Shown: positions 13,301 to 64,000, counted from the first letter of the stretch. The stretch is DNA of 64,000 bases from IMGVR_UViG_3300024999_000030:124001-188000; one strand, 5' to 3'. The notes: generated by a model from the sequence alone, not told the origin. Made by a program: numbers and translations.

Positions 13301-13443
13301 CATCTAGCAGAAGAATGTTACAAATTAAAATAGAATCAACAGAAGCTGCAGATAACATGATTACAACTTTGATGGGTGATGACGCAGAGGCTCGTCGCAC
13401 CTTTATTATGGAAAATTGCCAATTCGCTACTCCAGACGTGTGA
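10399..13443 (+). CDS. gyrB: DNA gyrase subunit B interrupted by an intein
   Basis: RPGMYIG, EIIDNAIDE, GGLHGVG, VEGDSAGG, PLRGK, IMTDAD|intein|TDGAHI, QRFKGLGEM. Confidence 0.95.
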   Translation: MGYNSKDIKVLKGLDPVRQRPGMYIGNTDDETGTHQTAFEIIDNAIDEAMNGYADLVAVTVHADGSLSVRDNGRGVPVQMHPTEKKYGVDLVFTVLHAGGKFDEQAYKTSGGLHGVGASVVNALSEWLKVEVKRDGRKYFREYANGNPIGELQDLGPSKKTGTIVTFKPSVKVFRKPEFSFEILKNRLEELGFLNEGVAIKLTDERTNEEFEVGHNDGLKRFVERIEPKAQILTPLIQVSSAKGEKVRVRCALQWKLDFDGDRLLAFTNNIRNGDGGTHVVGFKNVLTRCLTKALTGKKGASLVTGDDVREGLVAIIDVKMSDPKFSSQVKSKLVSEEARTALENMSGAFEDYFEKNPAHLNRVMQNAVRAAESREAARKARDLSRKKNAMDIGVLPGKLADCQSKDPAINELFLVEGDSAGGTSRQGRDRKFQAILPLRGKVINAEKATLHKLLANEEIKSLIAAIGTGIGENFDIERLRYHKICIMTDADSVTGDTPLMVFNKETKEMKLYRTDDFIDNVCTDISKYQIVACDLKHKSFGFRNLQQVYKHPSKKQLFRITDDNGHHVDVTSDHSVFVYRKETRSFEAVSTVRLSVEDQLVSSRAIPDITTTEMKINPYLLGLFIGHGQVDSQGHFKLLRSTRFKQRAVDFNSLPAVKITTTDRVAQTETLEFTNKRISTMISSFNITKSELPNCLYTAPTAQKLAFLRGLLESCAAVMVHQGISICAEDSLATGLIYLLRQFGVSPAILRGGAKALINIKIKDMAFIAGAWDHHKAVKDFGDLVAPSKEYELVKIKSIVELPQQPYVYDLSVDVDQNFVAGTGATLLHNTDGAHIKTLLLTFFYRHMPELVKKGHIYIAQPPLYRCVIRGKVHYILNDGELRLFKVKEKYGLLRTYKKGKKYAFPQEQIFDMPKGTLLYSDKLLFDVPIEDIMKLVTEPREDLKLQRFKGLGEMAAEQLAETTLNPSSRRMLQIKIESTEAADNMITTLMGDDAEARRTFIMENCQFATPDV
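11875..12891 (+). mobile_element. 339-aa intein (Ser1...His-Asn, +1 Thr) with degenerate LAGLIDADG endonuclease
   Basis: Block A SVTGDTP; block B VTSDHSVF; block F VYDLSV; block G LLHN/T; HEN-like blocks YLLGLFIGHG and FLRGLLESCA. Confidence 0.92.
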
Positions 13444-43903: not shown

Positions 43904-44374
43904 CTATCTCTTCATCTCTAAAAGAGCGGCTAGTTCCAAGAAAGTAAGGATACTGGTTTCATTCATATTAGTATTCATCATAATATCACAATCTATAAGG
44001 ATATAAGTTCCCCGAGAAGCATCAGTATATAGATTAGTATTAGGAATGGCATCTTTTAGTATTCTAGTTTTACTCCATGGGCACTCAGAACAATTTAATA
44101 TATTATTATCCGTAAGTATACAAGTCGGATTCTTTATATCATTATGCCGAGTAATACTTCCACGTGCAGCTCTCCATTTATGATCTGGATTAACTATTTC
44201 TTCTGCTTGTTTAAAGTGTTTAATATACTGTCTATTGATGTTATTAAGAGAATTACACCACTCTTCCCCTTTGTTTTCTTCAGTTACACATGATTCAAAG
44301 TCGCGTATGTATGAATGTATACGGTAGAGGGTTGAGTCGATAATGTAAGATTTATGTGTTGACTGTTCGCTCAT
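43904..44374 (-). CDS. Divergent Cys4-family paralog
   Basis: C...CSECPW...C...ILTFLELAALLE. Confidence 0.55.
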   Translation of the reverse strand: MSEQSTHKSYIIDSTLYRIHSYIRDFESCVTEENKGEEWCNSLNNINRQYIKHFKQAEEIVNPDHKWRAARGSITRHNDIKNPTCILTDNNILNCSECPWSKTRILKDAIPNTNLYTDASRGTYILIDCDIMMNTNMNETSILTFLELAALLEMKR

Positions 44375-44389
44375 TATGGCCTCACTATC

Positions 44390-44418
44390 AATATAATTTG
44401 AACGTTGTTAATTGTCAA
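44390..44418 (-). promoter_or_regulatory. Promoter TTGACA-N17-TATATT
   Basis: Exact spacing; heads the long leftward transcription unit. Confidence 0.72.
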
Positions 44419-44574
44419 GTAAGAGTCGATGATAATTAAATAAGGATAATAATGGGGCCGCCGTTAAGAGGATACTGTATAGGATTGATATGGGTATTGT
44501 ATGGATATTGGGTATTTAAACAGGAGGTTATAAAGAGATCGGTGTAATAATGTAAAGGCTTATGAATACTGAAT

Positions 44575-44890
44575 AAGTGAGTCATTTATGACACAGTATA
44601 ATAATAAGATAAGTGAAATAATATAGAGAGGAGTTAGGAGAGAGTTAGGAGAGAGATACTGAGTTGTGTCTACAAAAATGACACATGTGACTTAAATGAC
44701 ACACTGGCGTATAATAGATAAGTGAAATTTATAATGAAATGACATTAAGATAACTATTAGATACTGGTAAAAGTGAGTCATTTATGACACACTTTACTAA
44801 TAGTATGAGCGGTTAAGTGCGATAATATGAGATAATATGAAGAATATATACTGATAATCAACATGTGACAAAAATGACTCACTTTCACTT
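44575..44890. repeat. Iteron-like cluster: aagtgagtcatttatgacac x2 (44575-44594, 44771-44790) plus an inverted variant (~44860-44889)
   Basis: Identical 20-mers with internal palindrome gtcat-tt-atgac, in an AT-rich non-coding divergent region. Confidence 0.75.
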
Positions 44891-45088
44891 AAGTTGTGAA
44901 AATACTACCCCCCAGACAATAAGAGTCTGAGGTAATATCAGTATCTCCCCGCCCTAAGTCTAAGCCAAGCATCAAGCGACTTACACTTGTAAAGAGTTTG
45001 GCCAGTATCAAAGTATAGCGTGACGCTGTGTCATGCTAGATACTGGCGCGAGTGTAAGAGACTTAGATACTGGCCAAAGGAGTTAAAG

Positions 45089-45481
45089 ATGGCTAACATC
45101 TTGAGCATGAAGGGCTTGGGCGTCAAGGTTACCGTCAAGGTAATCAAGAAGCACAAGTTCGTGGACGGTTCTCCCGAGCTGTCCCACAAGGGCGAGTACA
45201 CTCTCACCCTGTCGGCGGGGTCCAAGTCCGTCTCTACTAAGTGCGTGGGGACGGGCGAGTTGTTCGCCAAGTGCTACGCCATGATGAGCGTGCACTTCCC
45301 CAAGAGCTATGCTAAGTTCCAGGCCATCAGCAAGGTGGAGAAGGCCGCGAACAAGGCGAAGGCGAAGGCGAACCACAAGGCGAAGAAGGCGGCGGCCAGC
45401 GGCGTGGACTTGAAGAGCCTCGCCGCACTCCTCAACCGGGCGAAGAAGGGCAACGGTAAGATGCTGGCCCTGTTCCTCTAA
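45089..45481 (+). CDS. Highly basic Lys/Ala-rich protein, paralog 1
   Basis: RBS aaggag; GC-rich codons; aligns by eye with 56703-57104. Confidence 0.8.
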   Translation: MANILSMKGLGVKVTVKVIKKHKFVDGSPELSHKGEYTLTLSAGSKSVSTKCVGTGELFAKCYAMMSVHFPKSYAKFQAISKVEKAANKAKAKANHKAKKAAASGVDLKSLAALLNRAKKGNGKMLALFL

Positions 45482-45659
45482 GCCAGTATCTCATCATCTT
45501 TCCAGTATCTTATTATAGATACTGACACAATCTAAAGTAACTCATGGGTGGGTTAGTATAATACTAACCCTCTCTGGTCAGTATTCTCCCACCTGCGCGT
45601 GGTACTGACTGCTGATAGATACTGGTCTATCACAACGGGAGAAGATAAGGAGGAGTAAG

Positions 45660-45830
45660 ATGGGACAAGCTAGACAAAGGGGAACCCGGGAACAGCGTGT
45701 CGAACAAGCCCAAGGCCGCAAAGTCGGGGTGCCGGTTAACCTCACGGCACAGCTCCAGCGTAACTTCAGTAACAAAAGGAGTTTCCGTGAGTCGTTGTTC
45801 ACTCGGCTCACTCGTCTCTTTCGCTCTTAA
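45660..45830 (+). CDS. 56-aa basic protein, not in the ORF track
   Basis: RBS aaggaggag; MGQARQRGTREQR... Confidence 0.65.
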   Translation: MGQARQRGTREQRVEQAQGRKVGVPVNLTAQLQRNFSNKRSFRESLFTRLTRLFRS

Positions 45831-46027
45831 GGGGCAGCATCTCAATCATCTGCCTTGACCTCAGTACGTTGAAGTGCTCTGAGGCTAAGTAGGACTAGGA
45901 CTCTCTTATAGTAGAGCCAGCCTACCCCCAAATATAGCCAGTATCCAGAGCTGGTCGATCAGTATCTTAATTACTTAGATATTGGTCGGCCATAATGTGG
46001 GTACTGTATATAGTGGTGTGTGTTTGA

Positions 46028-46199
46028 ACCATACCACATATAGACAGAAAGATGGGTTTTGAGAAAAATGAGATCTAATACCTATAGTTAGTTAGTATCT
46101 CATTGTATAATACTGGCGCTATAATTAAGTATGTCTATATGTAGTGGTGTTAGTAAAGACCATACCACATATAGACAGAAAGATGGGTTTTGAGAAAAA
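46028..46199. repeat. 41-bp direct repeat (46028-46068, 46159-46199) with a partial third copy at ~46223
   Basis: accataccacatatagacagaaagatgggttttgagaaaaa seen twice. Confidence 0.9.
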
Positions 46200-46317
46200 A
46201 CAGTTGTGGTGTGTTATAAAGACACTACCACATATAGTAGTGTAACATAACAGCGCCAGTAATAAAGATACTAGCTAAACCATATGATACTGGATAAACC
46301 AACGGAGGGAAACCACA

Positions 46318-49300
46318 ATGGCTTATCATAAGTCTCAACGCCGCAATCTCAAACCTACAACCATCAGACAGTATCATTATGCTGTAAGCCGGCTTCTCAA
46401 TGCTTGCCCTCCCAATCTTCTCATACAAGTTATGAAAATGATTCGGGCAGGAGCAAAGACTTACCCAGTGTCTAAGATTCAATCTTTCATGGCCGGTAGT
46501 GGATTCTACATGTATTCACGAGAGATTAACAAAGCCATCAACGCTATGCAATGGGGATTATGCCCGCCTCAATATCGCATCTCCAAGAATAATCGCTGGT
46601 ATTTGGATACATTCCCTCAAGAGCCTGGACCGGTTGCTTATGCTGCCATGGAAACGGTCAGTATCAATCATCCAATTACTGCCCCCACACTTCAACCTGC
46701 CATGAACATTGTGTAAATAAAGATACTGGTCTGTAATTCTACCAGTATCTTACCTTCGCCGCCTAGTTACTTTGCATAGTGCAGGGAAACTTCGGCGCGA
46801 TCATAGGCTAATACAAGGAGGACAATATGGATTACGGGTAGCTAAGCTCAAACCTTAATTCAGTGTCTAGAGATGGCGGTCAGTATCGTCCAGTACAAAT
46901 GATTATAAACACTGGGATACTGGCCGTCACACTGTAGATACTGGACAAAACTTTCAATAGGAGGAGGCTACAATGGCCTACACACTATATAATCCACCGA
47001 CTAAGTGGTGGAAAAGGCAACACAGTATCACAATAACTATCTGGCCTAAGTGGTTAGCTCAGAAGCTTTGCAATCACTCTGCACCTAAACCTTCATGGAT
47101 TACTTCAAACACTTGCTACTCTTGCCCGGACTGTTACACTCTTATGATTCCTCCAGGAGCAGTCACCACGAAGGAATAGGGAGCGAGGTGAACGATGAAC
47201 GAGCAACCCAATAGTTCCATCTCAATCGTCCGTTACTCCAGAGATGGCTTCGTGGCTAAACGGCAGTCCAAACATATGTATAATGTTTGGCATGAGCTGT
47301 TTAAGTTTAATAGCCATGACATGCCAGAACATCTTCGTGGTGTCAGCGTAGAAGCACACCATAAGATCGTCCCTTTCTATCGTGAACACCTCGCTGATTT
47401 TAACTGGGGCATCTGGGTATTCATAGAGGGACACGATAACATGATGTCTCTCAATCATCTGCACGGTCAAGATAGGATGGGGCTTAAGCGTTGGACTGCT
47501 GTAATTCCCAGTAACACAGAGGTTTACGGTGTGGGGTGGGATGTCATTGTCTCTATTAGTGATTTCATTCCACAGATGTTCGGCTGCTTCATACCCAAAC
47601 GAAACATTCCTCTCATCACGGATATCAAGTGTGACGATGAATGTGATGTGGAGTTAGAGCTAGAGAGGTATGACTGGGAGCGTGAAGAAGAGAATCGCAT
47701 GCTCCGTTGTGGGTATTAGAAAGGAGGTGTCTTAAGTTGCCAGTCTTCATCGTTCAACAACTCGAAGGCGTCCACTGGTTTGATTCCGGTGATCATGGGG
47801 CCTGTCTGACGCGAATCCTTTCCAGCCAGAGAGAGGGGCTGGAGTTTGCGAGGGATGTTACCAGACGAACACAATTCGAAACCCGAGTAGTGGAGACAGA
47901 CAAAAACCGAATTGTTTACAACGTCTGGTCTCCGCACGCTCCATAACAATCCGTTCTTCACAGAGTACTCCTGTTAAAGGGAGTACTCAATCCCGTCAAT
48001 GTATACTAGCTGGTGGGACGGGGTAAGAGCACAATATATAGTAGTGCTCAGGCTAGTATGCCACAACATATAGGAGAACACATGAACATCAGTCGGCGTA
48101 AGAGGGGTTACATAAATCAGAGAGGAGGATAACAATGAATAGGGCTGATGTCCTCTTGATACTGGACGAAAAGTTTGCCAAGAAGGTGACGGATGAATAC
48201 AAGAAACGCACTGGATACAGTAATGTAATCGGTAGCGTTTCTAGCAATATGAAAGTCTTTATCCCCATCATTAAAGATATTCTTGATGATGGGCTTCGTG
48301 TACAAGAAGAAAACGAAAGAGAGGTGCGACATGATAAAAGTTGAACCGATGGAACCGCTGGACACAGAAAACTACGCCGTGCCCTTGAATCCTTTTCATC
48401 AAGACATATACAGTATGGGGACGACGCTGGGGACAAACGTGACGGTGATGTACGGAAATCATACTCACACTCATCAACCTTACATCATCGTTGTTAACCT
48501 GGATACTGGCGAACGAATCAAGATCGCTTTCTGAAAGGGAGGTGTGTCATGAACGAAAAGGAAAAGAACAGGATGCGACGATTATTGGAAATGGCTTATT
48601 TGTTTGCATGGGGTCCAGATGGTACGGCTGACCGCAGAGATGAATGGTGGGAACTTAAAGCTTTACTTCCCAACGTAGGAACGATGTGTTATGGTGGTAA
48701 TGGTAAATTCCGATGGGACGAATGAGCCAAATAGGTTCAGTTCTTTTTCATAAGGAGGCGTGCCATGGAACCGATCTTTGTTAACAATTGGGGCGAAATA
48801 CGAGGCGGTATCTCAGTGGATGAAGTCTTGAAGGGGGATGGTAAGCTAGCTGGCTTTACTGTCTCTGGCAAGAATCAAGATGGTAAGGAGTTCTGCATTG
48901 ACTTCTTCGTTCATGTTGGTGCCAAAAACATCACCATCACTTGCAGCTAAGGGAGGAGGAACTACATGGAATGGAAAGTCGTTGATACTGGCGATGAAAT
49001 CACCATCGTTCCTGAAACCCGCAATCTCCCCGGCAAAGTTCTTTTCGTCGGAACCTCAGTGGATTGCGATGAATATCTATATGAACTGAGCAACGACGAA
49101 TAACCTAACCCCATAAGGAGGCTCAACATGGAATGCGGATATCTAATTGCGTGGGTCGGTCCTTGTAAAAGCCAACCATCGGACGACAGTTCGTGCCGAT
49201 GTGACAAACACAAGGACAAAGTCTGTGCATCTTGTGGTGCTCCAGCCACTCAGGAATGCGATACGACGGGACAGTTCGTTTGTGGTGCTCCTCTCTGCAA

Positions 49301-50004
49301 CGATTGCGAGCACACCATCGCAGAAGACGGAACCAATGGTGGGGTTGGTTTCGTTCAACTCTCTCCCCTCCCACCGGGCTACAAGCCACACTGCAAGAAA
49401 ACGGAACAGAAATTCACCCCCTGGTTCATGAGGCCACTTTCGGAGAGCTAAGGAGGCTCGACATGCCACTAAAACCTGGCGATCGTTTACCCCGTGCTAA
49501 GGTAGATATCATGGACCTTAGCGAAGTGATGGATGAGGATATGAGGGGTAAGTTGGACACCCTTCGCACCCTCACTCCTCCTAAGCCCAACCTGTTTCAA
49601 CTGGAAGGAGGACCGGCGGATGGATAGAAAAGATCGAATCATCCAGCGCCAGAACAATGAAATACTGCTAATGGAGCTTCGTCTAGAGGAACTGGAAAGG
49701 ACCCTCGGTGAAGCGGTTAATCTCATCCAAGAAATCCACACAGAGATGATGACCGAGCTTCATACCTGTGCTCTGTTCGATGATAAGGTCTGGGTCATCG
49801 ATCAAGAATTGGCAATGGCCCACGCTGCCTTTGAGGAGGATATGGCAAAGGGCCTTGAGACACTTCAAGACGATGAAAGGTCAGATGGCGTACTGGATTC
49901 ATGAAGCAGAGCAGGGAGAGGCATCTGGATATCTTGGTCCCGATAAGAGTGAAGAGTTTCTCAGTAGGATCCTTAACAAGCTGGATGTGCCTCCAGAGGA
50001 TTAA
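46318..50004 (+). other. Cluster of ~14 short hypothetical ORFs with strong SD sites, including Cys-rich Zn-finger 49128-49451
   Basis: aggagg-type RBS before nearly every start. Confidence 0.6.
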
Positions 50005-50054
50005 ACCAGTATCTCTATAGTCTTAAAGATACTGGCGAAGTAATAGATACTGAG

Positions 50055-50920
50055 CATGGATGACACGTGACTCAGTTCTATAGGTAAGCCTAGCATATAG
50101 CATGTAGCGTCTCCTATAAGAGGCACGTGACTATATGTTGTCGGATGGTGGCTAGGCATGTCGGGTAGCAGGCGGGTGGCTAATCCGATACTTCAGTTTC
50201 AATCATCGCACGTCACCTACTAAATAAGTGGTACGGCGGTAGTTGATTAGAGCCCATTTTAATCGCGTGACGATGATTCAGGGTAGGTCCAGTGACTCCT
50301 GCAATACACTTACCTCTGACGGGCTGATAACCCCTCATGCGAGTAATGTGACGGGAGACCATAGCACATGAATGCCCTTATCCCTATAGGGGACGGAACG
50401 TATGTGACTATGAGAATCGTCCAGAGTAAGAGCCTGGATGATAGGAGAGACGCGTAAGCGACTCTAAAGACTGGACGAATTAGACGGCAGGTGGGTGGCC
50501 AGTCTAATGGGTTTGCAAAACTATTCTACTGCATGGAGGGACGGCAAAAGCCCTTCCCAGTTTCCGTTAAGCGGTGCTGACCGTGACGGTGGAATAGTTT
50601 AAAGGGTAGGCTTAGAAATATACCACATGGAGAAGACACCCCAATCGAGTGGAGTCAGTCATATAGATGGCCTGTGATGGTATAGGGGCTTATGGAGAGT
50701 AAGCCAGGCTAAGCGGTTAGGGTGAGCAGGTGAGTGGCTTCCTAACACTTAAGTTAAACTGGTGTCTATCATATAGGTAGCGTCCGGTAGAGTCCGGTGT
50801 GTATGATGGGCCAGGAAAGGTAAGCGAGGAGATGGCATCGTAGATGTGGGAGTTTTCTTCCTATGGTGCAGATTAGGCGGTCCTCGCGTGGCGTCAGCAG
50901 GTGGGTGGCAGGCGCTCTCG
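50055..50920 (+). ncRNA. Candidate large structured non-coding RNA (~870 nt)
   Basis: No ORF >=60 aa in the track; many nested stems with G-U pairs; four GC-AGGYGRGTG-GC stem-loops. Confidence 0.72.
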
Positions 50921-50943
50921 GAATAATATGAAAGGAGGCGGCT

Positions 50944-51294
50944 ATGACTTCAAGAGAAAATCTTCAAAGAATTAATGAAGCAATCAAAGCCGCTAAACAT
51001 TTAATTAAACACCCCCATAGTAAATCGGCATGGGGGAGTTTAGATTATAACACTCTGCCAATAGGCAATTATTCATCAAAAGGATTTACTTGTCCAATAA
51101 GTTGTGATAATTGTCCACTGGCATTGGGAATAACTCCGTTGAATCTTCCTGAGTTTATTTGTGAGGGTAATGCCCATGACATTATAATGGAAAAACAAAT
51201 CATGGGAGAGGTTATATTACTTCTCATTCAATTTGTGGCCACTATGGAAGTAGTCCAGGAGGATATTAAAAGGGGCCAAGGAGGTACAACATGA
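50944..51294 (+). CDS. Cys4-family paralog
   Basis: CPISCDNCPL...FIC...GEVILLLIQFVA. Confidence 0.8.
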   Translation: MTSRENLQRINEAIKAAKHLIKHPHSKSAWGSLDYNTLPIGNYSSKGFTCPISCDNCPLALGITPLNLPEFICEGNAHDIIMEKQIMGEVILLLIQFVATMEVVQEDIKRGQGGTT

Positions 51295-51593
51295 GAAAAT
51301 TAAATAATAAAGAAAGACGAGCACAGATAGAAGCAGTAAAACAATTATTAGATGACGTTAAAGATATTTATCTTTGGAGATAATTACATTCTGTTACTGG
51401 ATTCTTTAATTCAATAGATTTCTGTCCGGACCTTCCTGGTCAAATTTTAAGGTGTCTGCATTGTCCCTTAAGATTGAACTCAGCAACTCATTTATGTCGA
51501 TATAGACATCAGAATTATAAGGAAGTCATAATATCGGATGGTGAAATAACCATTAGGCTTCTGGAGTTTCTAGCCTATATACAAATAACCTAA
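51291..51593 (+). pseudogene. Cys4-family paralog with in-frame TAA at 51381-51383
   Basis: ...IYLWR*LHSVTG...CPDLPGQILRCLHCPLR...HLCRY...DGEITIRLLEFLAYIQ. Confidence 0.8.
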
Positions 51594-51609
51594 CGAAAGG
51601 AGGCTTCAG

Positions 51610-52023
51610 GTGAGAAAATGTAATGGATGTAAGCAGACCAAAGATGAATATTACATGCTTAAACCTGAAGTCTGGATACAGGCATGTATGAAGCCCGTTA
51701 AAAACATCCCAGTAATATCTGTCCTACGCATGCTTTGTGTATCATGTGTAGAAAAGAGACTGGGAAGGGAACTTAACTGGCGGGACTTTGCTCTTTGCCG
51801 ACTTAACTTGGACCCATCTGAACCGAGAACGGCTATACTTCAAGATCGAATGAGTGGTATAACCAATCGCCTTCCACAGTGGTTCTTCAATAGATACGGT
51901 GAAGATCAATGGGATGTGTCGGCCTTAGCTTATGGATGGCCACTGAGAGGAGGATGCAATGAAAAACACACCGATAGAAAAAGCAAAGCGGGCGGCGGAG
52001 TATCTAATCAAGCATCCTCATAG
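51610..52023 (+). CDS. Hypothetical phage protein
   Basis: C..C, YML...VW, LCVSCVEKRLGREL...DF. Confidence 0.6.
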   Translation: MRKCNGCKQTKDEYYMLKPEVWIQACMKPVKNIPVISVLRMLCVSCVEKRLGRELNWRDFALCRLNLDPSEPRTAILQDRMSGITNRLPQWFFNRYGEDQWDVSALAYGWPLRGGCNEKHTDRKSKAGGGVSNQASS

Positions 52024-53528
52024 TAGAATCGCTTGGGCTATGTTAAGCGATAATACTTCTCCTTCGTGGGGCAATAAACTAATTCGGTGTCCATTTGATT
52101 GTTATAACTGCCCATTAAGAACTGGCGCAAATGAATTAGGTCTTCAGACATATATATGTGGTAAGTCTGATTTTGAATCCAAGAGTGGTAATTTATTCGG
52201 AGAGGTTATATTGTACCTCATCCAATTTGTTGCTTTTGTGGAAGCGTTTCAAGGGGCAAAGCCATGATAATCACATTTAAAAGTGTCATCAACATGCCTG
52301 ATTAGATTCATTGCCTTTGCTCAGGTGGAAGTGGAGGATTCCCATGAAAGTCCCAGATAAAGAGGATAGGCAATTACAACTCACGACGATTTACGACCTG
52401 ATAAATAACTTGGATGATCCCAAGTATTGGAGAAGACTTTGGAACGTTACTGGGGGGCACTATGAGGAGCCAAAAGCAGAATGGAAAGATTTTTGTCCAT
52501 CTATTGATGGTTCGCTCCGGTGCTATAATTGCCCCCTTCGAGTGTTGGGTGAACATTATCAAGTCAACTATCTCTGTCGCCATAGTGGTTCTAACAAACC
52601 TGATCCAGCTAATGGAGAAGTCCTTCGTAGGTTATTGGAGTTTCTAGCCTACTCACAATTATAAGGAGGGTCCAAATGAAATGAGAGGATATGAAATAAG
52701 GACCCAGGAACAAATGGAACATCAAATAAAAGTAGCCCAAGCATTACTTAACGACTTAAGTAATGTGAATCTATGGAAGGAACTGTCTCGTATAACTGGA
52801 CTACAACCAGTCGTAGTAAGTAAAACTAGATTAACTAAGACTGATTACTGTCCAGGTTTATCCGTCTCAACTCCCTCACGGTGTAAAATCTGTCCTCTTT
52901 GTCTCCCTAGAGCCCAAGTACCTGGACAAACTTCAAAATGGGATTACTATCTCTGCCGAAGGTATATGTCTCATGAAAAATTGTGTCCAGAGATAGAAGA
53001 TGGGGAAGCGACTCGTAGGCTATTGGAATTCATAGCCTTCATACAAATACAACCCGACTCATAGGAGGTGACGATGAAAATCTCTCGCGTTCCATCACAG
53101 TTCGCCCCTGGTCGCTACAACGATGAATTCGTTTATAGGGAGGTGATCATGAAGCATGGTGTTACATGACCAACTCAAATAGTACAACCCCCATCAAAAT
53201 CATCAAAGAAATCCCTGAAGAACAAATCAAAGCAGCCCAGTATCTAATCAATCACATTGATGATCCTGAAGGCTGGAAACGCTTGCAGGAAGTAACTGGT
53301 GATACTGGGATCTTTGAATCCACAATCGATCACTGTGGCGACAATGCATACTCTGGAAGGCTGCCACAGATCACATGTTCAGCGTGTCCCCTCAGGGTAG
53401 AAAGTAGCACATATCTCTGCCGATATAGTCACCCAAATTATCCTCATGTCAATATGGAGGACAGTGCGATAATTCTGAAACTGATAGAGTTTATCGCATA
53501 TGTTCAAACAGTTTTTCCTAAGGCATGA
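51959..53528 (+). CDS. Four tandem Cys4-family paralogs (51959-52267, 52344-52664, 52681-53064, 53166-53528)
   Basis: C..CxxCPL..Y(L/I)C..GE...L(L/I)(E/Q)F(I/L/V)A in each. Confidence 0.8.
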
Positions 53529-53846
53529 GATATACTTGGAAGGAATGCAGAGAGTTAATTAGCTGCTGCACTTAAAGTAGTAGCTAAGCCACGATCCAAG
53601 AAAGCCTGGAAGGAACTGGGTAAAGTTACTGGTGTGAATTATCGCACACCCGACAATAGTCTAGTCGGGAAAGAAGTCGATTTTTGTAAGAAGGCTTGTT
53701 CCAAATGTCCCTTGTATGTAAAGAGAGCGGTATACATTTGCCGCAAGGACATTTGGCCAGAAATGTTGATAGACGTTAGTGAGGGCGAAATCCTTCGTCA
53801 CTTGCTAGAGTTTATCGCTCACATCCAAATACAGGAGGAGCAGGAC
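53525..53846 (+). pseudogene. Cys4-family paralog with a +1 frameshift near 53560 and no stop before ORF 53847
   Basis: ATGA overlap start MRYTWKECRELI; other frame continues AAALKVVAKPRSKKAWKELGKVTG...CSKCPL..YIC..EGEILRHLLEFIA. Confidence 0.65.
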
Positions 53847-53984
53847 ATGGCAAACGCATCTCAACTCCGTCGGGCCAAAGCGAACAAACTCACCGCCACC
53901 CAGGAACGCAAGCAGTCTCTCAAGGCTAATCGTGTCTTCGGACAGACGAGGACGACGATGCCAAGGAAGTCCAAGAGCCGTTAG
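53847..53984 (+). CDS. 45-aa basic peptide with its own RBS
   Basis: ggaggag then ATG; MANASQLRRAKANK. Confidence 0.55.
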   Translation: MANASQLRRAKANKLTATQERKQSLKANRVFGQTRTTMPRKSKSR

Positions 53985-54108
53985 TCTCCGTTAGTATTCA
54001 GAGCCAGTGGGCCAGTATCTTATAATGTAACAATCTCAACAATGAGATACTGGCTCATTGTAATGTGGATACTAACTCTGGGGCGAAAGTTTAAATGGGA
54101 GGTGGACA

Positions 54109-54768
54109 ATGGAAAAACTGATATTGCCCCTGATGAAGCCCGACCCGAAACAAATAGCAAAGGAAATGAACATAATGAACATGAAGACGGTCGGAAGCAA
54201 TTATCTTGAGAATCTCTTTCGGCCCCCAGGATATGCAAAGCTTATCATCACTGCCACCATTCAATTCATGAATACTCAATTTCCCAAGGATACTGGGCTG
54301 ATTGTTACTGGACTTAGCGGAAGTTTACTGGGATATGCCATCATGCTCTTGGGTGGTATTCCAGTAGCCTTTGTCCGTAAGGATGATGAACATTCTCATG
54401 GTGAAAGGATTGAAGGTATCCTCGCAAAGAAAGTCGTGTTCTTTGACGACTTCATTGCTAGGGGGACGACCTTTTTAAATATTCAAACGGCCATCCAGAA
54501 ACACAATCACATATTATCCAGCAAGGTTAAATTTGCTGGCTCTTTCTTCTGGTCATATTTCGATGTTATGTGTAAGGAAGAAGTTGCCAAGAACGGTCCC
54601 GTGTTTCGACTTCAGGTTGCCCGTTCTCCTGGGTCAAGTTATATCCAACGCTGGAACGATCATGACTCTAGGTGGAAGCTTCTTGAAAAATACAAGCTAG
54701 GATCCTATGACGATCCTTCTTGGAAACAACCTCCCAAGGAAATCAACTTATCTGGCGATGCTGTGTAA
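54109..54768 (+). CDS. Type I phosphoribosyltransferase (orotate PRTase-like)
   Basis: VAFVRK..HSHG..IEG and PRPP-binding VVFFDDFIARGTT. Confidence 0.75.
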   Translation: MEKLILPLMKPDPKQIAKEMNIMNMKTVGSNYLENLFRPPGYAKLIITATIQFMNTQFPKDTGLIVTGLSGSLLGYAIMLLGGIPVAFVRKDDEHSHGERIEGILAKKVVFFDDFIARGTTFLNIQTAIQKHNHILSSKVKFAGSFFWSYFDVMCKEEVAKNGPVFRLQVARSPGSSYIQRWNDHDSRWKLLEKYKLGSYDDPSWKQPPKEINLSGDAV

Positions 54769-55048
54769 TTAAACTACAACCAAGGAGGTGGGAATGAACA
54801 TAAGAAAACTGGAAGTCATCCGGCAGGTATATCGTCGGGCATTCCTGGATCAGTCTCATACCTTTAAATTGAAAGACCGGCTCCAACGCATCTCTCAATT
54901 GAACGGCAAGAATGCTGAAGGAACAACAGTCTTCTTCGTTCGGGCATTTAAGACTGGGTGTGGTGGGGGTGTTTACTACGAGATTATCAAGGAAACGGAG
55001 AACAAAGACATCCCCCATATAAACTGTCTTTCCTGAAGGGATAAGACG

Positions 55049-55258
55049 ATGGTACTGGCAGACTTCAAACCTGGCGACCGGGTTAAGGTCGTGTCGGAAG
55101 AGAACTGGGGCAACCGCAAGAACCTCGTGAATAAGACGGGGGTGGTTGTTAAGACCATGAACGTCCATAAGGATGGCGTGGTGATGGTTAACATGGACGA
55201 CAGAAGGTGGAGACAGCAGACCTTCTATCCGTCCCAACTCAGTATCGTCCAGGACTAG
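55049..55258 (+). CDS. Single KOW/SH3-like beta-barrel protein
   Basis: FKPGDRVKV....TGVVV....VMVNMD. Confidence 0.55.
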   Translation: MVLADFKPGDRVKVVSEENWGNRKNLVNKTGVVVKTMNVHKDGVVMVNMDDRRWRQQTFYPSQLSIVQD

Positions 55259-55748
55259 GAAGAGTTAACAGGTCGTGGTCAAACTCCCAGTGATGGTTTG
55301 GGCATAAGATGTGAGTGTTTTTCGGCCCATTAATTTCCCCTAGAGTCATAGGCACTGGACACTTTGATATGGCTATGATGTGAGCGACTTCAACATGCTT
55401 ACTGTAGCCACACACCTGACATCCCTTGCTTAATCTCTCTCGATTCCAGCGCCTGGCTAATCCCCTAATGCCCGAATACCTATTAGCGGGTAAACCTTTG
55501 CTTGTCTTGTGGCCATTGAGGTGTTCTTCAAGAGTAGATGACTTCAATTTTGCGGCAAGTTTATCTATCTCTTTCCTACATGGCAGGCAAAATGTTCTCC
55601 TGCTGGTACATGGTCCTCCACATTTAGCACATTTATGCTCTGGCTTGCGTTTAGGGTGGCGTAGATTGTTGTAGGTTGCGGCACAAGATTTAGAACAGAA
55701 CTTGTCATTGTCATGGGACTTTAAACACTGGGGACATTGCTTCTGCAT
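55239..55748 (-). CDS. HNH endonuclease with N-terminal Zn fingers
   Basis: FCSKSC; CQVCG...EVAHI...N...LCPNHHWEFD; RBS aaggag. Confidence 0.85.
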   Translation of the reverse strand: MQKQCPQCLKSHDNDKFCSKSCAATYNNLRHPKRKPEHKCAKCGGPCTSRRTFCLPCRKEIDKLAAKLKSSTLEEHLNGHKTSKGLPANRYSGIRGLARRWNRERLSKGCQVCGYSKHVEVAHIIAISKCPVPMTLGEINGPKNTHILCPNHHWEFDHDLLTLPSPGRY

Positions 55749-55809
55749 GTTAATCTCCTTTGAACACACTATATACTGTTTTATTAATATAGCGTGTTCA
55801 AATCTTTTT

Positions 55810-55885
55810 GGGTCGTTAGCTTAGCATTGAAAGCCATCGGCTCATAACCGATAGATCACAGGTGAGAATCCTGTACGACCCACCA
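55810..55885 (+). tRNA. tRNA with CAT anticodon (elongator Met or Ile2), atypical elbow
   Basis: Acceptor gggtcgt/acgaccc + ACCA; anticodon arm atcgg-ctcataa-ccgat; T arm acagg-tgagaat-cctgt. Confidence 0.85.
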
Positions 55886-55886
55886 T

Positions 55887-55961
55887 GGGCCCGTAACTCA
55901 ATGGTAGAGTATCGCCCTTTTAAGGCGAGAGTTGAGGGTTCGAGTCCCTCCGGGCCCACCA
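55887..55961 (+). tRNA. tRNA-Lys(TTT)
   Basis: Acceptor gggcccg/cgggccc + ACCA; tcgcc-cttttaa-ggcga; TTCGAGT. Confidence 0.95.
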
Positions 55962-55999
55962 CTTATCTTATACAGGCGAACGCCAGGAAGGAGGTAACC

Positions 56000-56380
56000 G
56001 TGCCGTGCGATTGCGGTAATTGCCATTTCGGATTCAACTGTTCCAAAGAGTGGCAGACTCTCCACCCCGGAACGACCTGGTACGCCTGCGAGTTCTGCGG
56101 ACTCTATCAGGCTTCAGCTCCCATGTGTAACAAGTGCGAGCTGCAGGAGGAAGAGACCAAGTCCGGTATGAAGAGGTACGAGTTCCAGCGGCGCTCCCCA
56201 TTCTCTGGTAAGATTCACACCATGACCATCCAGATGACGGAGCAGCAGTTCGCGGAACTCTCCCAGCCCAACGGTCGTCACATCCAGGACATCCTCCCCC
56301 ATTGCACCCCCGATGAGAGGGAGTTCATCATGACCGGTATCACTCCCGAGGAATGGGAGCAGACCTTCGGGAAGAAGTAG
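56000..56380 (+). CDS. Cys-rich N-terminus plus conserved phage domain (IQ...P...EREF..TG.T..EW)
   Basis: RBS ggaggt before GTG 56000. Confidence 0.65.
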   Translation: MPCDCGNCHFGFNCSKEWQTLHPGTTWYACEFCGLYQASAPMCNKCELQEEETKSGMKRYEFQRRSPFSGKIHTMTIQMTEQQFAELSQPNGRHIQDILPHCTPDEREFIMTGITPEEWEQTFGKK

Positions 56381-56387
56381 TTACTTT

Positions 56388-56473
56388 GCGGCTGTGGTGG
56401 AATGGCATACACTACAGACTTAAAATCTGTCGGTCGTAAGACCTTGCGGGTTCGAATCCCGCCAGCCGCACCA
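56388..56473 (+). tRNA. tRNA-Leu(TAA), long variable arm
   Basis: Acceptor gcggctg/cagccgc + ACCA; acaga-cttaaaa-tctgt; TTCGAAT. Confidence 0.95.
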
Positions 56474-56702
56474 GCCCTTCCCAGTATCTCTTTCGTCCGA
56501 ACCGATAGGATACTGTCTCTGGCATTTCCCAAGGTGGAGATGCTGTATAATCGTAAGACCCACGGTAATGTATAGAGAGGATAAGCCTACTCTATCTATT
56601 GTGGGGACGGAGTAGTACCGCATTCCAGTATTAAAATGAGTCCAGGATACTGGTCTTGCGGAAACTTAAACTGGACCAAAGATCATAGGGGTTTTACAAC
56701 AA

Positions 56703-57104
56703 ATGAATATTCTCAACCAGAAAGGCCTCGGCGTGAAGTTCGTGGTTAAATGCACCAGGAAGGCAGTCTTCATCGAGGGTTCGCCCGAGAAGTCTTCCAA
56801 GGGGCATTACAACCTCACCGTCAGCGCCGGCGCCAAGAAGTTCTCCACGACCTGCATTGGTTCGGGAGAGCTGTTCGCTAAGGCATGGGCGATGTTGGCT
56901 GCCCACTTCCCCGCCGCCTATAAGAAGGCGACGGCCATCTCCAAGCAGCAGCGCGATGAAAACCGCGCCAAGGCAAAGACCACCCGGAAGGCGAAGAAGT
57001 CCGCTGCCTCCGGCGCCGATGTCAAGACGCTGCTTCAGGCTCTTGCTCGTCAGGGTAAGGGCAAGGGTAAGGGCAACGGTAAGCTTGTTGCCCTCTTCCT
57101 GTAG
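56703..57104 (+). CDS. Highly basic Lys/Ala-rich protein, paralog 2
   Basis: Shares NIL..KGLGVK, GSPE.S.KG, GELFAK, ASG.D.K.L, GNGK..ALFL with 45089-45481. Confidence 0.8.
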   Translation: MNILNQKGLGVKFVVKCTRKAVFIEGSPEKSSKGHYNLTVSAGAKKFSTTCIGSGELFAKAWAMLAAHFPAAYKKATAISKQQRDENRAKAKTTRKAKKSAASGADVKTLLQALARQGKGKGKGNGKLVALFL

Positions 57105-57124
57105 TCGGAACTTTTAATCCGGCT

Positions 57125-57345
57125 ACCCACAATCTGAATTAACCCCCGGAGGGTCCCTGACGGGACCCTTCAATCCTGCCGGTGTCCCGTCGCTCGTGGG
57201 GCAGGGTAAGCAGACTTTATAGTTTGCAGGCGATGGGAAAGAAGTTCGGTTAGTGTCATTAGACACTAAGAAAGGTAGGTGCCGATGAAGCAGAGTTTTA
57301 AGGCTTAGTCTATTGGTAGACTATAGCCGGCACCACAGGCGATAC
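57125..57345 (+). ncRNA. Candidate structured RNA or leader
   Basis: Hairpins agggtccc/gggaccct, ttagtgtc/gacactaa, ggtgccg/cggcacc enclosing tagtcta/tagacta. Confidence 0.4.
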
Positions 57346-57384
57346 TCAACGACTTAGAGTTTTATCTCCACACAGGAGGTTACG

Positions 57385-57648
57385 ATGAGCGAAACCAAAG
57401 GTACTCTCGGTAGCGTTTTGGCAAAAGCCCTTCACAACACCCCCATCGAAGCCCGGCTCAAGGAAGAGAAGTTCAATGCTTCCCAGCGGGAATGGCTCAA
57501 GGACATCCTCATGCGCGACTTGAGGTTGGTGGAACCCAAGGTTCTGGGAGACGCCATTCATGAGGCTTCCGTCCGAATCAACAAGGGTGAAAACGAGTGG
57601 CGACTGCTCCGCGACAAAGCTGTTCGAGCACTCTCTCTTCGCAAGTAA
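57385..57648 (+). CDS. Hypothetical protein
   Basis: RBS caggagg; GC-rich codons. Confidence 0.7.
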   Translation: MSETKGTLGSVLAKALHNTPIEARLKEEKFNASQREWLKDILMRDLRLVEPKVLGDAIHEASVRINKGENEWRLLRDKAVRALSLRK

Positions 57649-57849
57649 GTTAACCTTCACTTAGTCTACTCCGGATAGGTCGGCCAGGTACATTCGCCGG
57701 GATTATCTTGGAGGTGGGGTAGGCATTGGCATAGAACTATGTGGGTGAGAACGGTCGTAAGGCCCGGAGTGACCACATATCATTAGTTATGTCATGTAAG
57801 CCCTATCCCTTTAAGGCTTTACCAGTATCAACCTTCGTAGGAGACAGAC

Positions 57850-63844: not shown

Positions 63845-64000
63845 TCTTCCCTTCGTCGTGTATCTCTACCGTCAGTATCTCTTTGCCAAAGCTTATTTAC
63901 TTTGGGAGATACTGAATGTCCAGGATCGTTGGTTGCTTGTGTGTCCCTTTGAACAGACAATCAACGATGAGTTCTGTGATATCATGGAGAGACTCGACTT

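What the first reader, a model, noticed from the sequence alone, without database searches (positions are those of the whole stretch)
44760..57829. CCAGTATC/GATACTGG octamer field, frequently as inverted pairs
Seen: exact copies at 44760, 45002, 45039, 45066, 45483, 45502, 45618, 45938, 46286, 46722, 46742, 46916, 46937, 48158, 48502, 48984, 50006, 50028, 53301, 54012, 54046, 54289, 56481, 56646 and 57822, plus many 1-mismatch copies. I noticed only two in the first 44 kb (~23299, ~43950). Most are intergenic, and inverted pairs with variable spacers sit upstream of both basic paralogs, the large RNA and the PRTase, and downstream of tRNA-Leu. Both orientations occur, unlike Chi. Inference: a phage-specific operator or promoter element, or a protein-loading site protecting first-injected DNA.
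Basis: partly seen in the sequence, partly recalled or inferred. Interest (0 to 1): 0.78.

Follow-up and report, generated by a model that had tools for sequence, protein, structure and literature searches.

The report
Repeated RNA hairpins in phage early region
The repeated eight-letter word is real and far above chance, but it is best read as the conserved stem core of hairpins in the early transcripts of an uncultured 333-kb groundwater phage, not as a DNA operator or promoter; what the hairpins do is untested.

Summary
CCAGTATC/GATACTGG occurs 28 times in the window against 1.2 expected, and 26 copies lie in 44760-57829. The 7-mer core occurs 45 times after 44.4 kb and 4 times before. The field sits at the start of a higher-GC island of small plus-strand ORFan genes in a 332.7-kb groundwater phage. 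No related phage was found.

The interpretation changes. Nothing is conserved around the word beyond wAGATACTGGc, and there is no -35 box. About two thirds of the copies pair locally with an inverted copy. The pairing runs past the octamer through flanks that differ between copies. Three homologous ~90-nt two-tier hairpins lie in the window, and a fourth, diverged copy lies 8 kb downstream. They show compensatory changes in 11 of 29 pairs. They have 20 G.U pairs on the sense strand against 3 on the antisense strand, and fold much better as sense RNA. None is followed by a U-tract.

Best reading: intercistronic and leader RNA hairpins, probably processing or stability signals in the manner of T7 RNase III sites, with the octamer duplex as a recognition element. 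Function is inferred, not shown. A possibly related palindromic repeat occurs in one Prevotellaceae genome. Interest is moderate.

The parts
44375..45088 (.). Divergent control region at the left edge of the higher-GC island. It lies between the minus-strand gene 43904-44374 and the first plus-strand gene at 45089. It holds core copies at 44471, 44655, 44760 and 44939, plus several 20-bp palindromes of a different kind (GTGWGTCA-N4-TGACACAC).
   Evidence: Sequence read; repeats D11, I1 and I2; promoter-like sites; GC profile.
44470..44515 (+). Four degenerate motif-like units spaced 11 bp apart (GGATACTGTAT AGGATTGATAT GGGTATTGTAT GGATATTGGGTAT). Unexplained. This is the one feature that hints at binding on double-stranded DNA.
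   Evidence: Read directly from the sequence; 1-mismatch copies at 44471 and 44504.
44997..45078 (+). Leader hairpin of the first island gene. An 18-nt inverted repeat (94% complementary) is built on copies 45002 and 45066, with copy 45039 inside. An alternative longer fold (44951-45066) pairs 45002 with 45039 instead. The 3' arm runs into the Shine-Dalgarno sequence of gene 45089.
   Evidence: Repeat I9; folds (z -6.2; z -5.2).
45482..45626 (+). Composite hairpin that starts 1 nt after the stop codon of gene 45089-45481. Copies 45483 and 45502 lie on the 5' side, and 45518 and 45618 on the 3' side. Other hairpins are nested inside.
   Evidence: Fold (-56.4 kcal/mol, z -6.4).
45929..46016 (+). 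Two-tier hairpin H-A. The lower stem pairs copy 45938 with a degenerate copy at 46000. The upper stem (16 bp) pairs 45959 with 45978. An asymmetric internal loop (AGAG / AUAAUGU) separates the stems.
   Evidence: Fold (z -5.7); alignment; covariance model hit of 89.7 bits; sense -42.7 against antisense -24.7 kcal/mol.
46720..46751 (+). Hairpin of 11 bp with reversed polarity (GATACTGG in the 5' arm). It starts 3 nt after the stop codon of gene 46318-46716.
   Evidence: Fold (z -5.1).
46859..46945 (+). Two-tier hairpin H-B. Its copies are at 46860 (degenerate), 46880, 46916 and 46937. It ends 28 nt before the ATG at 46973, the first gene of a 12-gene tightly packed block.
   Evidence: Fold (z -7.3; 85 bits).
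50006..50052 (+). Hairpin on copies 50006 and 50028, starting 1 nt after the stop codon at 50004, followed by a free copy at 50046. It leads into the 0.9-kb ORF-free structured stretch.
   Evidence: Fold; sequence.
53237..53308 (+). Inverted pair inside gene 53166-53528 (9 bp plus partial extension).
   Evidence: pairing probability 1.0.
53984..54084 (+). Two-tier hairpin H-C. It begins at the stop codon of gene 53847-53984 and ends 25 nt before the ATG of the PRTase gene at 54109. The upper stem (19+3 bp) is built on copies 54012 and 54046. The lower stem is built on degenerate copies at 53993 and 54068.
   Evidence: Fold (z -7.8); 112 bits; sense -48.9 against antisense -27.5 kcal/mol.
56481..56516 (+). 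Hairpin that starts 8 nt after tRNA-Leu (copies 56481 and 56509).
   Evidence: tRNA position; fold.
56625..56653 (+). Hairpin upstream of the second basic paralog gene at 56703 (copy 56625, degenerate, with copy 56646).
   Evidence: Fold.
59780..59882 (+). Weaker pair of core copies (59781 and 59875) closing a branched fold.
   Evidence: fold (z -2.0).
63872..63915 (+). Hairpin of the TCAGTATC/GATACTGA variant, inside gene 63828-64142.
48158..48165 (+). One of the single copies with no clear partner. The others are at 44760, 46286, 48502, 48984, 54289 and 57822. Most lie within about 60 nt of a start codon. Their role is not resolved.

Best explanation
The octamer is the conserved double-helical core of a family of hairpins that form in the sense-strand (plus-strand) RNA of the phage's early ORFan island.

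Anatomy. The fullest form is a ~90-nt two-tier hairpin. It has a lower stem of about 11 bp, a conserved asymmetric internal loop (5' AGAG, 3' UAAUGU-like), an upper stem of 14-19 bp and a variable loop. The octamer duplex occurs once in each tier, 19-22 nt apart. Simpler forms are single stems of 9-18 bp.

Position. The 5' arm (CCAGUAUC) typically begins 1-8 nt after a stop codon or a tRNA. The 3' arm (GAUACUGG) lies about 15-60 nt before the next start codon. The hairpins therefore punctuate the long same-strand transcripts at the boundaries of gene blocks.

Proposed role. I propose they are RNA processing or stability signals, working like the RNase III sites between phage T7 early genes. 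A double-strand-specific factor would recognise the helix, with the octamer duplex as a positive sequence determinant. It would cut at or near the internal loop. This would leave a protective 3' hairpin on the upstream message and a defined 5' end just ahead of the next ribosome-binding site.

Shown versus inferred. Shown: enrichment, pairing, covariation, strand asymmetry and position. Inferred: that the single strand is RNA rather than plus-strand DNA, that there is cleavage or stabilisation, and which factor acts.
For: - Enrichment and confinement to the island.
- No conserved flank beyond about 10 nt, yet extended complementarity within pairs. Four proximal pairs extend 5-7 bp outward through unrelated sequences.
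- Fold z-scores of -5 to -8 for the main elements.
- H-A, H-B and H-C align over their whole length and share the internal loop.
- A covariance model built from them finds a fourth copy 8 kb downstream (42.8 bits). It has lost the octamer in the upper stem but keeps the helix through double changes, and keeps the AGAG/UAAUGU loop.
- On the four copies, 94.6% of cells are paired and 11 of 29 pairs have changes on both sides. None of 500 shuffles reaches this, and slid controls give 33-41% paired.
- Strand asymmetry: sense folds are -42.7, -44.5, -48.9 and -36.0 kcal/mol; antisense folds are -24.7, -30.3, -27.5 and -18.4. There are 20 G.U pairs on the sense strand and 3 on the antisense strand, binomial p about 2e-4. 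The six longest stems have 10 G.U and 0 A.C.
- Polarity: CCAGTATC is the 5' arm in about 12 of 15 hairpins, and the first copy after a gene end is of that orientation in 9 of 10 spacers (read together with the gene list).
- All neighbouring genes are on the plus strand and tightly packed with strong Shine-Dalgarno sites.
- Helix length of about two to three turns plus an internal loop matches the described anatomy of RNase III substrates, in which such loops restrict cleavage to one strand and leave a protective 3' hairpin (PMC1540722, read).
Against: - No RNA data exist for this phage, so no transcript end, cleavage or half-life has been seen.
- No relative was found, so covariation rests on four paralogous copies in one genome, in an alignment fitted to the model.
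- When all weak pairs are pooled, G.U against A.C is only 26 to 17. The RNA argument therefore rests on the long elements.
- E. coli RNase III is reported to recognise substrates mainly by excluding certain base pairs rather than by a positive consensus (PMC1540722). The two octamer copies are arranged as a direct repeat along the helix, not with the two-fold symmetry expected for an RNase III dimer.
- About six exact copies lie inside genes, and about seven have no partner.
- The 11-bp-spaced array at 44470-44515 looks like a DNA-binding array.
- No RNase III, dsRBD or other candidate reader was found among the island proteins scanned.
Confidence: 0.45

Rival explanations
1. The octamers are DNA-level binding sites for a phage-encoded, monomer-binding regulator, acting as operators or stoperator-like roadblocks. 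They would shut off or time the early island. The hairpin potential would be a by-product of placing sites in both orientations.
For: - A short asymmetric site with no flanking consensus, concentrated in intergenic DNA near gene starts and densest beside the divergent promoter region.
- Same-orientation neighbours are 18-22 bp apart, about two DNA turns.
- The degenerate array at 44470-44515 has 11-bp spacing.
- Precedent: the 13-bp asymmetric stoperators of cluster A mycobacteriophages, bound by a monomeric repressor at about 30 sites (PMC9283540, listed).
Against: - It does not explain complementarity that extends through non-conserved flanks, the compensatory changes, or the fourth copy that keeps the helix but has lost the octamer.
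- It does not explain the 20-to-3 sense bias of G.U pairs or the sense-strand energy advantage of about 70 kcal/mol in total.
- Stoperators are oriented one way relative to transcription. Here both orientations occur in a one-directional gene array.
- No DNA-binding domain was detected in the island proteins scanned. The basic paralog gave a low-confidence model with no fold match.
Confidence: 0.2
2. The elements are selfish palindromic repeats of the MITE, REP or REPIN kind that colonised the intergenic DNA of the island. The octamer would be the binding site of a transposase that acts in trans, and the repeats would have no role for the phage.
For: - One Prevotellaceae genome carries at least four copies of a ~126-nt near-perfect palindrome. 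Each arm has three (C/T)(C/T)AGTATCT units spaced 22 nt apart. The copies sit 2-45 nt after stop codons, in either orientation relative to the genes, and show no strand asymmetry. That is the behaviour of a young mobile palindrome.
- The phage elements share the 9-mer, the roughly 22-nt spacing and the tiered palindrome.
- REP-type elements typically sit just after stop codons (established knowledge).
Against: - The phage copies are old and diverged, yet they keep sense-strand pairing through G.U pairs and double changes. That is purifying selection on structure, not neutral decay.
- They are confined to one 20-kb island and do not spread through the other intergenic DNA in the 82 kb seen.
- No target-site duplication or conserved termini were seen.
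- No transposase or RAYT gene lies in the 82 kb examined, only an HNH endonuclease.
- The match to the Prevotellaceae element was found by searching for the motif itself, so coincidence is not excluded.
Confidence: 0.15
3. GATACT(GG) is a -10-like promoter element, and the inverted copy supplies the 5' arm of an upstream hairpin. Each unit would then be a composite terminator-promoter cassette, like the PeSL elements of T4-type phages.
For: - GATACT keeps the key A2 and T6 of a -10 hexamer, and is the -10 hexamer of the phage T7 A1 promoter (from memory).
- The copy nearest a gene lies 32-63 nt upstream of the ATG for genes 45660, 46318, 46973, 54109 and 56703.
- Four CCAGTATCT copies are followed directly by TATAAT-like hexamers (repeat D6), and one has a -35-like box (53997-54026).
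- PeSLs are conserved stem-loop plus promoter units between ORFan genes in plastic regions (PMC4122927).
Against: - There is no -35 or any information upstream of the motif across 45 copies.
- There is no excess of sigma-70-like sites (25 found, 22 expected).
- No U-tract follows the stems, so they are not intrinsic terminators.
- Copy 45066 and the lower stem of the fourth element sit so close to the ATG that a start there would remove the Shine-Dalgarno sequence.
- Half of the copies would drive antisense transcription.
Confidence: 0.12
4. The hairpins act as single-stranded DNA of the plus strand, for example as recombination sites that bound gene cassettes (in the manner of integron attC sites) or as replication or priming signals.
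For: - The strand asymmetry is equally compatible with plus-strand DNA.
- The inverted cores have variable, non-conserved centres and sit directly after ORFs, in a one-directional array of small ORFan genes of deviant composition.
- Gene 45089-45481 is bracketed by AGATACTGGC ... GCCAGTATCT (repeat I17).
Against: - No integrase, HUH nuclease or Rep gene lies near the array.
- The core differs from the attC core sites.
- Many adjacent genes have no site between them.
- G.T wobbles are poorly tolerated in DNA stems.
- The phage is a large double-stranded DNA phage with no known single-stranded stage (inference).
Confidence: 0.05

Closest known systems
RNase III processing signals between the early genes of phage T7 (R0.3-R1.3) and the conserved Bs-RNase III sites in Bacillus phage SP82 early mRNA
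   Same: Both are hairpins placed between cistrons of a long early transcript. They start just after a stop codon and end ahead of the next ribosome-binding site. They have two stems separated by an asymmetric internal loop and about two or more helical turns. They are repeated several times per early region with partly conserved sequence. The T7 anatomy is as summarised in PMC1540722; the SP82 part is from memory.
   Different: No cleavage has been shown here. The octamer duplex is far more conserved than anything reported for E. coli RNase III substrates, and it occurs twice per helix as a direct repeat. Loop sizes vary from 4 to more than 40 nt. Some copies lie inside genes.
PeSL (promoter-early stem-loop) cassettes of T4-type phages
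   Same: Both are conserved stem-loop units with a family-specific stem sequence. Both lie between small ORFan genes in a plastic, early-expressed region of a large phage (PMC4122927; PMC2839356).
   Different: A PeSL is defined by a near-consensus sigma-70 promoter next to the stem-loop. No such promoter consensus accompanies the stems here. No evidence of shuffling is available, because there is no relative to compare.
Extended start-associated sequences (ESAS) of cluster K mycobacteriophages
   Same: Both are phage-specific, imperfect inverted repeats with a variable spacer. Both lie upstream of a subset of genes in the non-structural half of the genome, in many copies, with function unknown (PMC3203893).
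   Different: ESAS arms are 17 bp with 4-13 bp spacers and are coupled to a 13-bp motif at the ribosome-binding site. Here the conserved core is 8-10 nt, spacers reach more than 100 nt, the elements are tiered, and there is no coupled start-site motif.
Stoperators of cluster A mycobacteriophages (L5 gp71 sites)
   Same: Both are short asymmetric sites present in tens of copies, mostly in short intergenic gaps of a phage genome (PMC9283540).
   Different: Stoperators are single sites in one orientation relative to transcription, spread over the whole genome of a temperate phage. They act as double-stranded DNA. The copies here are mostly paired, extend into covarying helices, show strand-specific wobble pairs and are confined to one island.
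REP / REPIN / MITE-type palindromic repeats, including the ~126-nt palindrome found here in a Prevotellaceae genome (CAMWKZ01 contigs)
   Same: Both are intergenic palindromes placed just after stop codons, with tiered arms. The Prevotellaceae element has the same 9-mer at about 22-nt spacing.
   Different: The bacterial copies are near-perfect, show no strand bias and occur in either orientation. The phage copies are diverged, biased to the sense strand, all in one orientation, and carry a conserved internal loop. No cognate transposase was seen.

Membership tests
RNase III-type intercistronic processing signal (T7 R-site kind) | Double helix of about two turns or more, formed locally in the transcript | tested here: met
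   The two-tier elements have 29-33 predicted pairs, with z-scores of -5.7 to -7.8.
RNase III-type intercistronic processing signal (T7 R-site kind) | Internal loop or bulge separating an upper and a lower stem | tested here: met
   A conserved asymmetric loop (AGAG against UAAUGU-like) is present in all four two-tier copies.
RNase III-type intercistronic processing signal (T7 R-site kind) | Acts in RNA of the coding strand | tested here: inconclusive
   The sense strand folds far better and has 20 G.U pairs against 3. This fits RNA but does not exclude plus-strand DNA. No RNA reads were available.
RNase III-type intercistronic processing signal (T7 R-site kind) | Cleavage by RNase III at a defined phosphodiester | not testable with these tools
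   Needs an in vitro cleavage assay or transcript end mapping.
PeSL composite terminator-promoter cassette | Conserved stem-loop between ORFan genes in a plastic region | tested here: met
   The island proteins have no Pfam or PHROG families.
PeSL composite terminator-promoter cassette | Adjacent sigma-70-type promoter (-35, 17-nt spacer, -10) conserved among copies | tested here: not met
   There is no information content outside the motif, and promoter-like sites are at the chance level (25 against 22.3).
Sigma-70-type or single-element phage promoter | One orientation relative to the transcribed genes, at a fixed distance from starts | tested here: not met
   There are 17 copies in one orientation and 11 in the other within a one-directional gene array. 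Some copies are too close to the ATG.
Intrinsic (rho-independent) terminator | GC-rich stem followed by a U-tract | tested here: not met
   None of the motif hairpins is followed by a T-run. The terminator scan is at the chance level (10 against 10.4) and lists none of them on the plus strand.
Stoperator / monomeric-repressor operator | Asymmetric site acting as duplex DNA, oriented with transcription | tested here: not met
   Both orientations occur, and pairing extends beyond the site with strand-specific wobbles. Protein binding itself is not testable here.
REP/REPIN or MITE | Many near-identical copies spread over the intergenic DNA of the replicon, with a cognate transposase (RAYT or DDE) and/or target-site duplications | tested here: inconclusive
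   The copies are confined to one island and diverged. No target-site duplication and no transposase were seen in 82 kb. 250 kb of the genome was not examined.
Integron attC site | Core sites RYYYAAC ... GTTRRRY and a nearby tyrosine recombinase IntI | tested here: not met
   The core is CCAGTATC ... GATACTGG, and no integrase was found among the neighbouring proteins scanned.
Chi-like recombination hotspot | Single-strand-read octamer with strong orientation bias | tested here: not met
   Both orientations occur, mostly as the two arms of one hairpin.
Any described RNA family (Rfam 15) | Match to a curated covariance model | tested here: not met
   Only the three tRNAs match, at the gathering threshold or at E up to 1. 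The Prevotellaceae elements also have no match.

The most novel reading that the evidence does not exclude
The octamer duplex is the address label of a sequence-specific double-stranded-RNA recognition system. A phage-encoded or host protein would read CAGUAUC/GAUACUG in A-form helices, two copies per element set two turns apart. Through these hairpins it would coordinate processing, stability or translation of a whole early gene island. The element would have been domesticated from a mobile palindromic repeat of the kind still active in a Prevotellaceae genome. The ~90-nt two-tier hairpin with its invariant internal loop would then be a new cis-regulatory RNA class.
Probability: 0.2. Interest if true: 0.75.

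Novelty: new variant of a known kind. Interest (0 to 1): 0.5.

Why it matters
Huge phages are known almost only from metagenomes, and nothing is known about how they organise early gene expression. This is a statistically solid, precisely mapped set of about a dozen structured elements that mark the boundaries of gene blocks in an early ORFan island. It gives concrete handles for experiments: a covariance model, exact stems, an invariant internal loop and a testable 8-bp duplex.

If the octamer is read as double-stranded RNA, that would be a rare case of positive sequence recognition in a helix. If the link to the Prevotellaceae palindrome is real, it would be an example of a mobile repeat turned into a regulatory RNA.

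If the hairpins turn out to be ordinary RNase III sites, the finding is still a useful annotation, but not a surprise.

Tried and rejected
- Relatives for comparison: none found. I tried megablast and tblastn against phage records. I searched IMG/VR with three island proteins, the 5.8-billion-protein collection with the basic protein, and JGI metagenomes with the paralog alignment. All returned only this same genome.
- Low-share sequencing runs turned out to be the same phage at low depth.
- Assembly chimera at the GC jump: rejected.
- Sigma-70 promoters and intrinsic terminators: at chance level.
- Bipartite promoter or longer consensus: rejected by the information profile.
- Dimeric operator: rejected by the variable spacing.
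- Simple scan for inverted octamer pairs in IMG/VR: saturated with chance hits.
- Stricter two-tier patterns in IMG/VR: only this phage plus isolated single hairpins.
- The Prevotellaceae palindrome has no match in the phage or plasmid collections or in Rfam.
- The basic paralog as candidate reader: ORFan, AlphaFold2 pLDDT 64.5, no significant fold match. Weak, non-significant rows for Whirly/PUR-like folds were not used.
- The resemblance of the 56-aa Arg-rich ORF (45660-45830) to the lambda N arginine-rich motif is from memory only. It does not fit, because the loops are not conserved.
- Pooled G.U against A.C over all weak pairs (26 to 17) is not decisive. Only the long elements carry the strand argument.

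Full report
**Source and setting**

The window is positions 124001-188000 of a 332.7-kb viral contig (IMGVR_UViG_3300024999_000030) from a groundwater metagenome. The same genome was assembled at the same length, with different start points, in about 25 samples. It is probably a complete, circularly permuted genome of a huge phage.

The first 44 kb have 31-39% GC. They encode nucleotide-metabolism and chaperone functions: dUTPase, dNMP kinase, ThyX, the topoisomerase II large subunit, a DEDDh exonuclease, GroEL and DnaJ.

At about 44.4 kb the GC content jumps to 43-53% and the gene direction turns. From 45089 onward there is a dense array of small plus-strand genes with strong AAGGAGG ribosome-binding sites. 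Almost all of them lack any Pfam or PHROG family. The array also holds three tRNAs, an HNH endonuclease gene on the other strand, and a 0.9-kb ORF-free stretch. In 17.8 kb fetched beyond the window, GC falls back to 36-38% by 72-82 kb. An independent 24-kb contig from another assembler crosses the GC jump, so the junction is real.

**The observation**

CCAGTATC/GATACTGG occurs 28 times against 1.24 expected. All listed coordinates are right, and one copy (53237) was missed.

The real unit is wAGATACTG(G/A)c. The 7-mer core occurs 45 times in 44.4-64 kb and 4 times in the first 44.4 kb. The field is densest in 44.4-47 kb and thins out. The last exact 8-mer is at 64362, and there are none in 72-82 kb.

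Intergenic density is 3.7 per kb and coding density is 0.42 per kb, with about 0.03 per kb expected by chance. The word is therefore concentrated between genes but is also over-represented inside them.

**What the copies have in common**

Aligning all 45 core copies shows no information outside about 10 nt: no -35 box, no downstream element. Sigma-70-like promoters and hairpin-plus-T-run terminators are at chance level in the region.

The copies are, however, mostly paired. In local partition-function folds, the motif bases have a mean pairing probability of 0.83, against 0.61 for random positions. For about two thirds of the copies the dominant partner is another copy, often degenerate.

The pairing goes well beyond the octamer. 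Four nearby pairs extend 5-7 bp outward through flanks that differ from pair to pair (TTTGG, GGTCGAT, TGGCGGT, CAGTGGG). These flanks are not part of a shared consensus. The complementarity is therefore a property of each pair, not of a longer binding site. Folds of the intergenic regions have z-scores of -4 to -8.

**A defined element**

Three regions fold into the same two-tier hairpin: 45929-46016 (H-A), 46859-46945 (H-B) and 53984-54084 (H-C). Each has four parts:
- a lower stem of about 11 bp containing a degenerate octamer pair;
- an asymmetric internal loop;
- an upper stem of 14-19 bp containing the exact octamer pair;
- a variable loop.

The three regions align over their whole length, including the unpaired AGAG on the 5' side and A(U/C)A(A/C)UGU on the 3' side. 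The consensus fold has 29 pairs.

A covariance model built from them finds no further full copy in the window. It does find a fourth copy 8 kb downstream, at L119:21172-21254 (window-equivalent 72396-72478, 42.8 bits). This copy has lost the octamer in the upper stem (CAAUGUC with GGCGUUG). It keeps the helix through double changes and keeps the internal loop. It ends directly at the ribosome-binding site of the next gene.

On the four copies, 94.6% of cells are paired and 11 of 29 pairs carry changes on both sides. None of 500 shuffles reaches the observed values, and sliding the partner by 1-3 columns drops pairing to 33-41%. The caveats are that the copies are paralogues in one genome and that the alignment was fitted to the model.

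**Which strand**

For the four elements, the sense (plus) strand folds at -42.7, -44.5, -48.9 and -36.0 kcal/mol. The complementary strand folds at -24.7, -30.3, -27.5 and -18.4 kcal/mol. The sense folds contain 20 G.U pairs and the antisense folds 3; the binomial p is about 2e-4.

An extension that treats G.T and A.C alike gives 10 G.U and 0 A.C in the six longest stems. Pooling all weak pairs gives only 26 to 17.

Double-stranded DNA sites or cruciforms would not show this bias. The selected molecule is single-stranded and of plus polarity. Every neighbouring gene is on the plus strand, so sense RNA is the simplest reading. Plus-strand DNA is not formally excluded.

**Position and polarity**

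The 5' arm usually carries CCAGTATC and the 3' arm GATACTGG, in about 12 of 15 hairpins. The 5' arm begins:
- 1 nt after the stop codons at 45481 and 50004;
- 3 nt after the stop at 46716 (this hairpin has reversed polarity);
- at the stop codon of 53984;
- 8 nt after tRNA-Leu.

The last 3' copy lies 15-63 nt before the ATGs at 45089, 45660, 46318, 46973, 54109 and 56703.

Tightly packed genes inside blocks (for example 46973-50004) have no hairpin between them. The hairpins therefore mark block boundaries. None is followed by a U-tract.

**Mechanism proposed**

The anatomy has three features: two stems totalling two to three helical turns, an asymmetric internal loop, and a position between cistrons of a long early transcript. 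This is the anatomy described for RNase III processing signals. There, internal loops restrict cleavage to one strand and leave a 3' hairpin that protects the upstream RNA (PMC1540722). T7 early mRNA is the classic case.

I therefore propose that these are processing or stability signals. The strong conservation of the octamer, while its flanks drift, argues that the sequence of the duplex is itself read by some factor. That step is inference. So are cleavage itself and the identity of the factor.

Points that do not fit neatly:
- the two octamers are a direct repeat along the helix, not two-fold symmetric;
- E. coli RNase III is reported to select substrates mainly by excluded base pairs;
- some copies are single or lie inside genes;
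- a degenerate array with 11-bp spacing at 44470-44515 looks like a DNA-binding array.

**Rivals**

- A DNA operator or stoperator-like site remains possible for the single copies. It cannot explain the covarying helices or the strand bias.
- A -10-like promoter reading (GATACT) fits the distance to several start codons, and a few copies are followed by TATAAT-like hexamers (repeat D6). Against it, there is no -35, both orientations occur, and two copies lie too close to the ATG.
- A selfish palindromic repeat is suggested by the one outside match (next section). The phage copies, however, are diverged, biased to the sense strand and confined to one island.
- Cassette-type single-stranded DNA recombination sites lack a recombinase and do not match attC cores.

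**Outside matches**

A 22-base-specified pattern taken from the 3' half of the two-tier element was scanned over one genome per species. It returned 8 stretches against about 4 expected by chance. Four of them come from one Prevotellaceae metagenome-assembled genome.

Each of those four is a ~126-nt near-perfect palindrome. Each arm is made of 22-nt units that start with (C/T)(C/T)AGTATCT, three per arm. The palindromes are placed 2-45 nt after stop codons, in either orientation relative to the genes, and fold equally well on both strands. That is the profile of a young mobile palindrome.

It shares the 9-mer, the spacing and the tiered design with the phage element. The inter-motif sequences differ, and the hit was found by searching for the motif itself. 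I therefore treat the relation as possible, not shown.

The same pattern and a looser one found no comparable field in IMG/VR apart from this phage. Rfam has no family for either element.

**Candidate readers**

The first island gene (45089) and its paralog (56703) are 59% identical. They encode basic proteins with a predicted four-strand sheet, a helix, and a long Lys/Ala-rich helix. They have no homologues in 5.8 billion proteins. The model is of low confidence (pLDDT 64.5) and has no significant fold match. Nothing links them to the motif except adjacency.

**Verdict**

The operator, promoter and protection interpretations are not supported for the well-resolved copies.

The best-supported description is a new family of sense-strand RNA hairpins with a conserved 8-bp duplex core, marking gene-block boundaries in the early island of a huge phage. 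Repeated conserved hairpins in phage early regions are a known kind of feature: T7 and SP82 RNase III sites, PeSLs and ESAS. This one differs in its tiered design, its sequence-conserved duplex and its invariant internal loop. Its function is untested.

Noticed in passing
window 50040-50945: A 0.9-kb stretch with no ORF of 50 aa or more, between the hairpin at 50006 and gene 50944. It folds with z = -5.8 (20 shuffles) and carries four copies of GCAGGYGRGUGGC (about 50170, 50488, 50727, 50897). It has no Rfam match even at E up to 1. It is a candidate large structured RNA.
   Followed up: partly
window 44570-44890: At least four copies of a 20-bp palindrome of a different kind (GTGWGTCA-N4-TGACACAC). 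They overlap -10-like TATAAT boxes in the divergent promoter region. They look like operators of a dimeric repressor.
   Followed up: partly
window 50944-53846: A tandem array of about eight paralogous small genes with conserved Cys pairs and a shared C-terminal LLEFIAY-type motif. Two copies look broken: a stop at about 51380 and a disrupted start region at 53529-53633.
   Followed up: no
window 46004-46250: Three related hairpins (tatatagtggtgt...accacatatag), two of them followed by the same 30-nt tail. They lie between H-A and gene 46318 and do not contain the octamer.
   Followed up: no
window 44400-72000 (extended through L119 and L123): A higher-GC island (43-53% against 31-39% for the flanks) peaking at 56-58 kb and decaying gradually downstream. 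It consists almost entirely of ORFan genes plus three tRNAs (Met, Lys, Leu).
   Followed up: partly
window 55239-55748 (minus strand): An HNH endonuclease gene (PF13391, E 1.3e-9). It is the only minus-strand gene in the island and sits directly upstream of the tRNA-Met/tRNA-Lys pair.
   Followed up: no
window 10399-13443: The topoisomerase II large-subunit ORF is 1014 aa, but it matches a 661-position PHROG profile end to end. It therefore carries about 350 aa of extra sequence, possibly an intein or an inserted domain.
   Followed up: no
window 45660-45830 and 53847-53984: Two very small, Arg/Lys-rich ORFs (56 and 45 aa). The N-terminus of the first recalls arginine-rich RNA-binding peptides such as lambda N. 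This resemblance is from memory and was not tested.
   Followed up: no
L133:2638-2674: The Prevotellaceae contig that carries one of the palindromes also has a match to the abiF RNA family (RF03085, 58 bits), about 1 kb upstream of the element.
   Followed up: no
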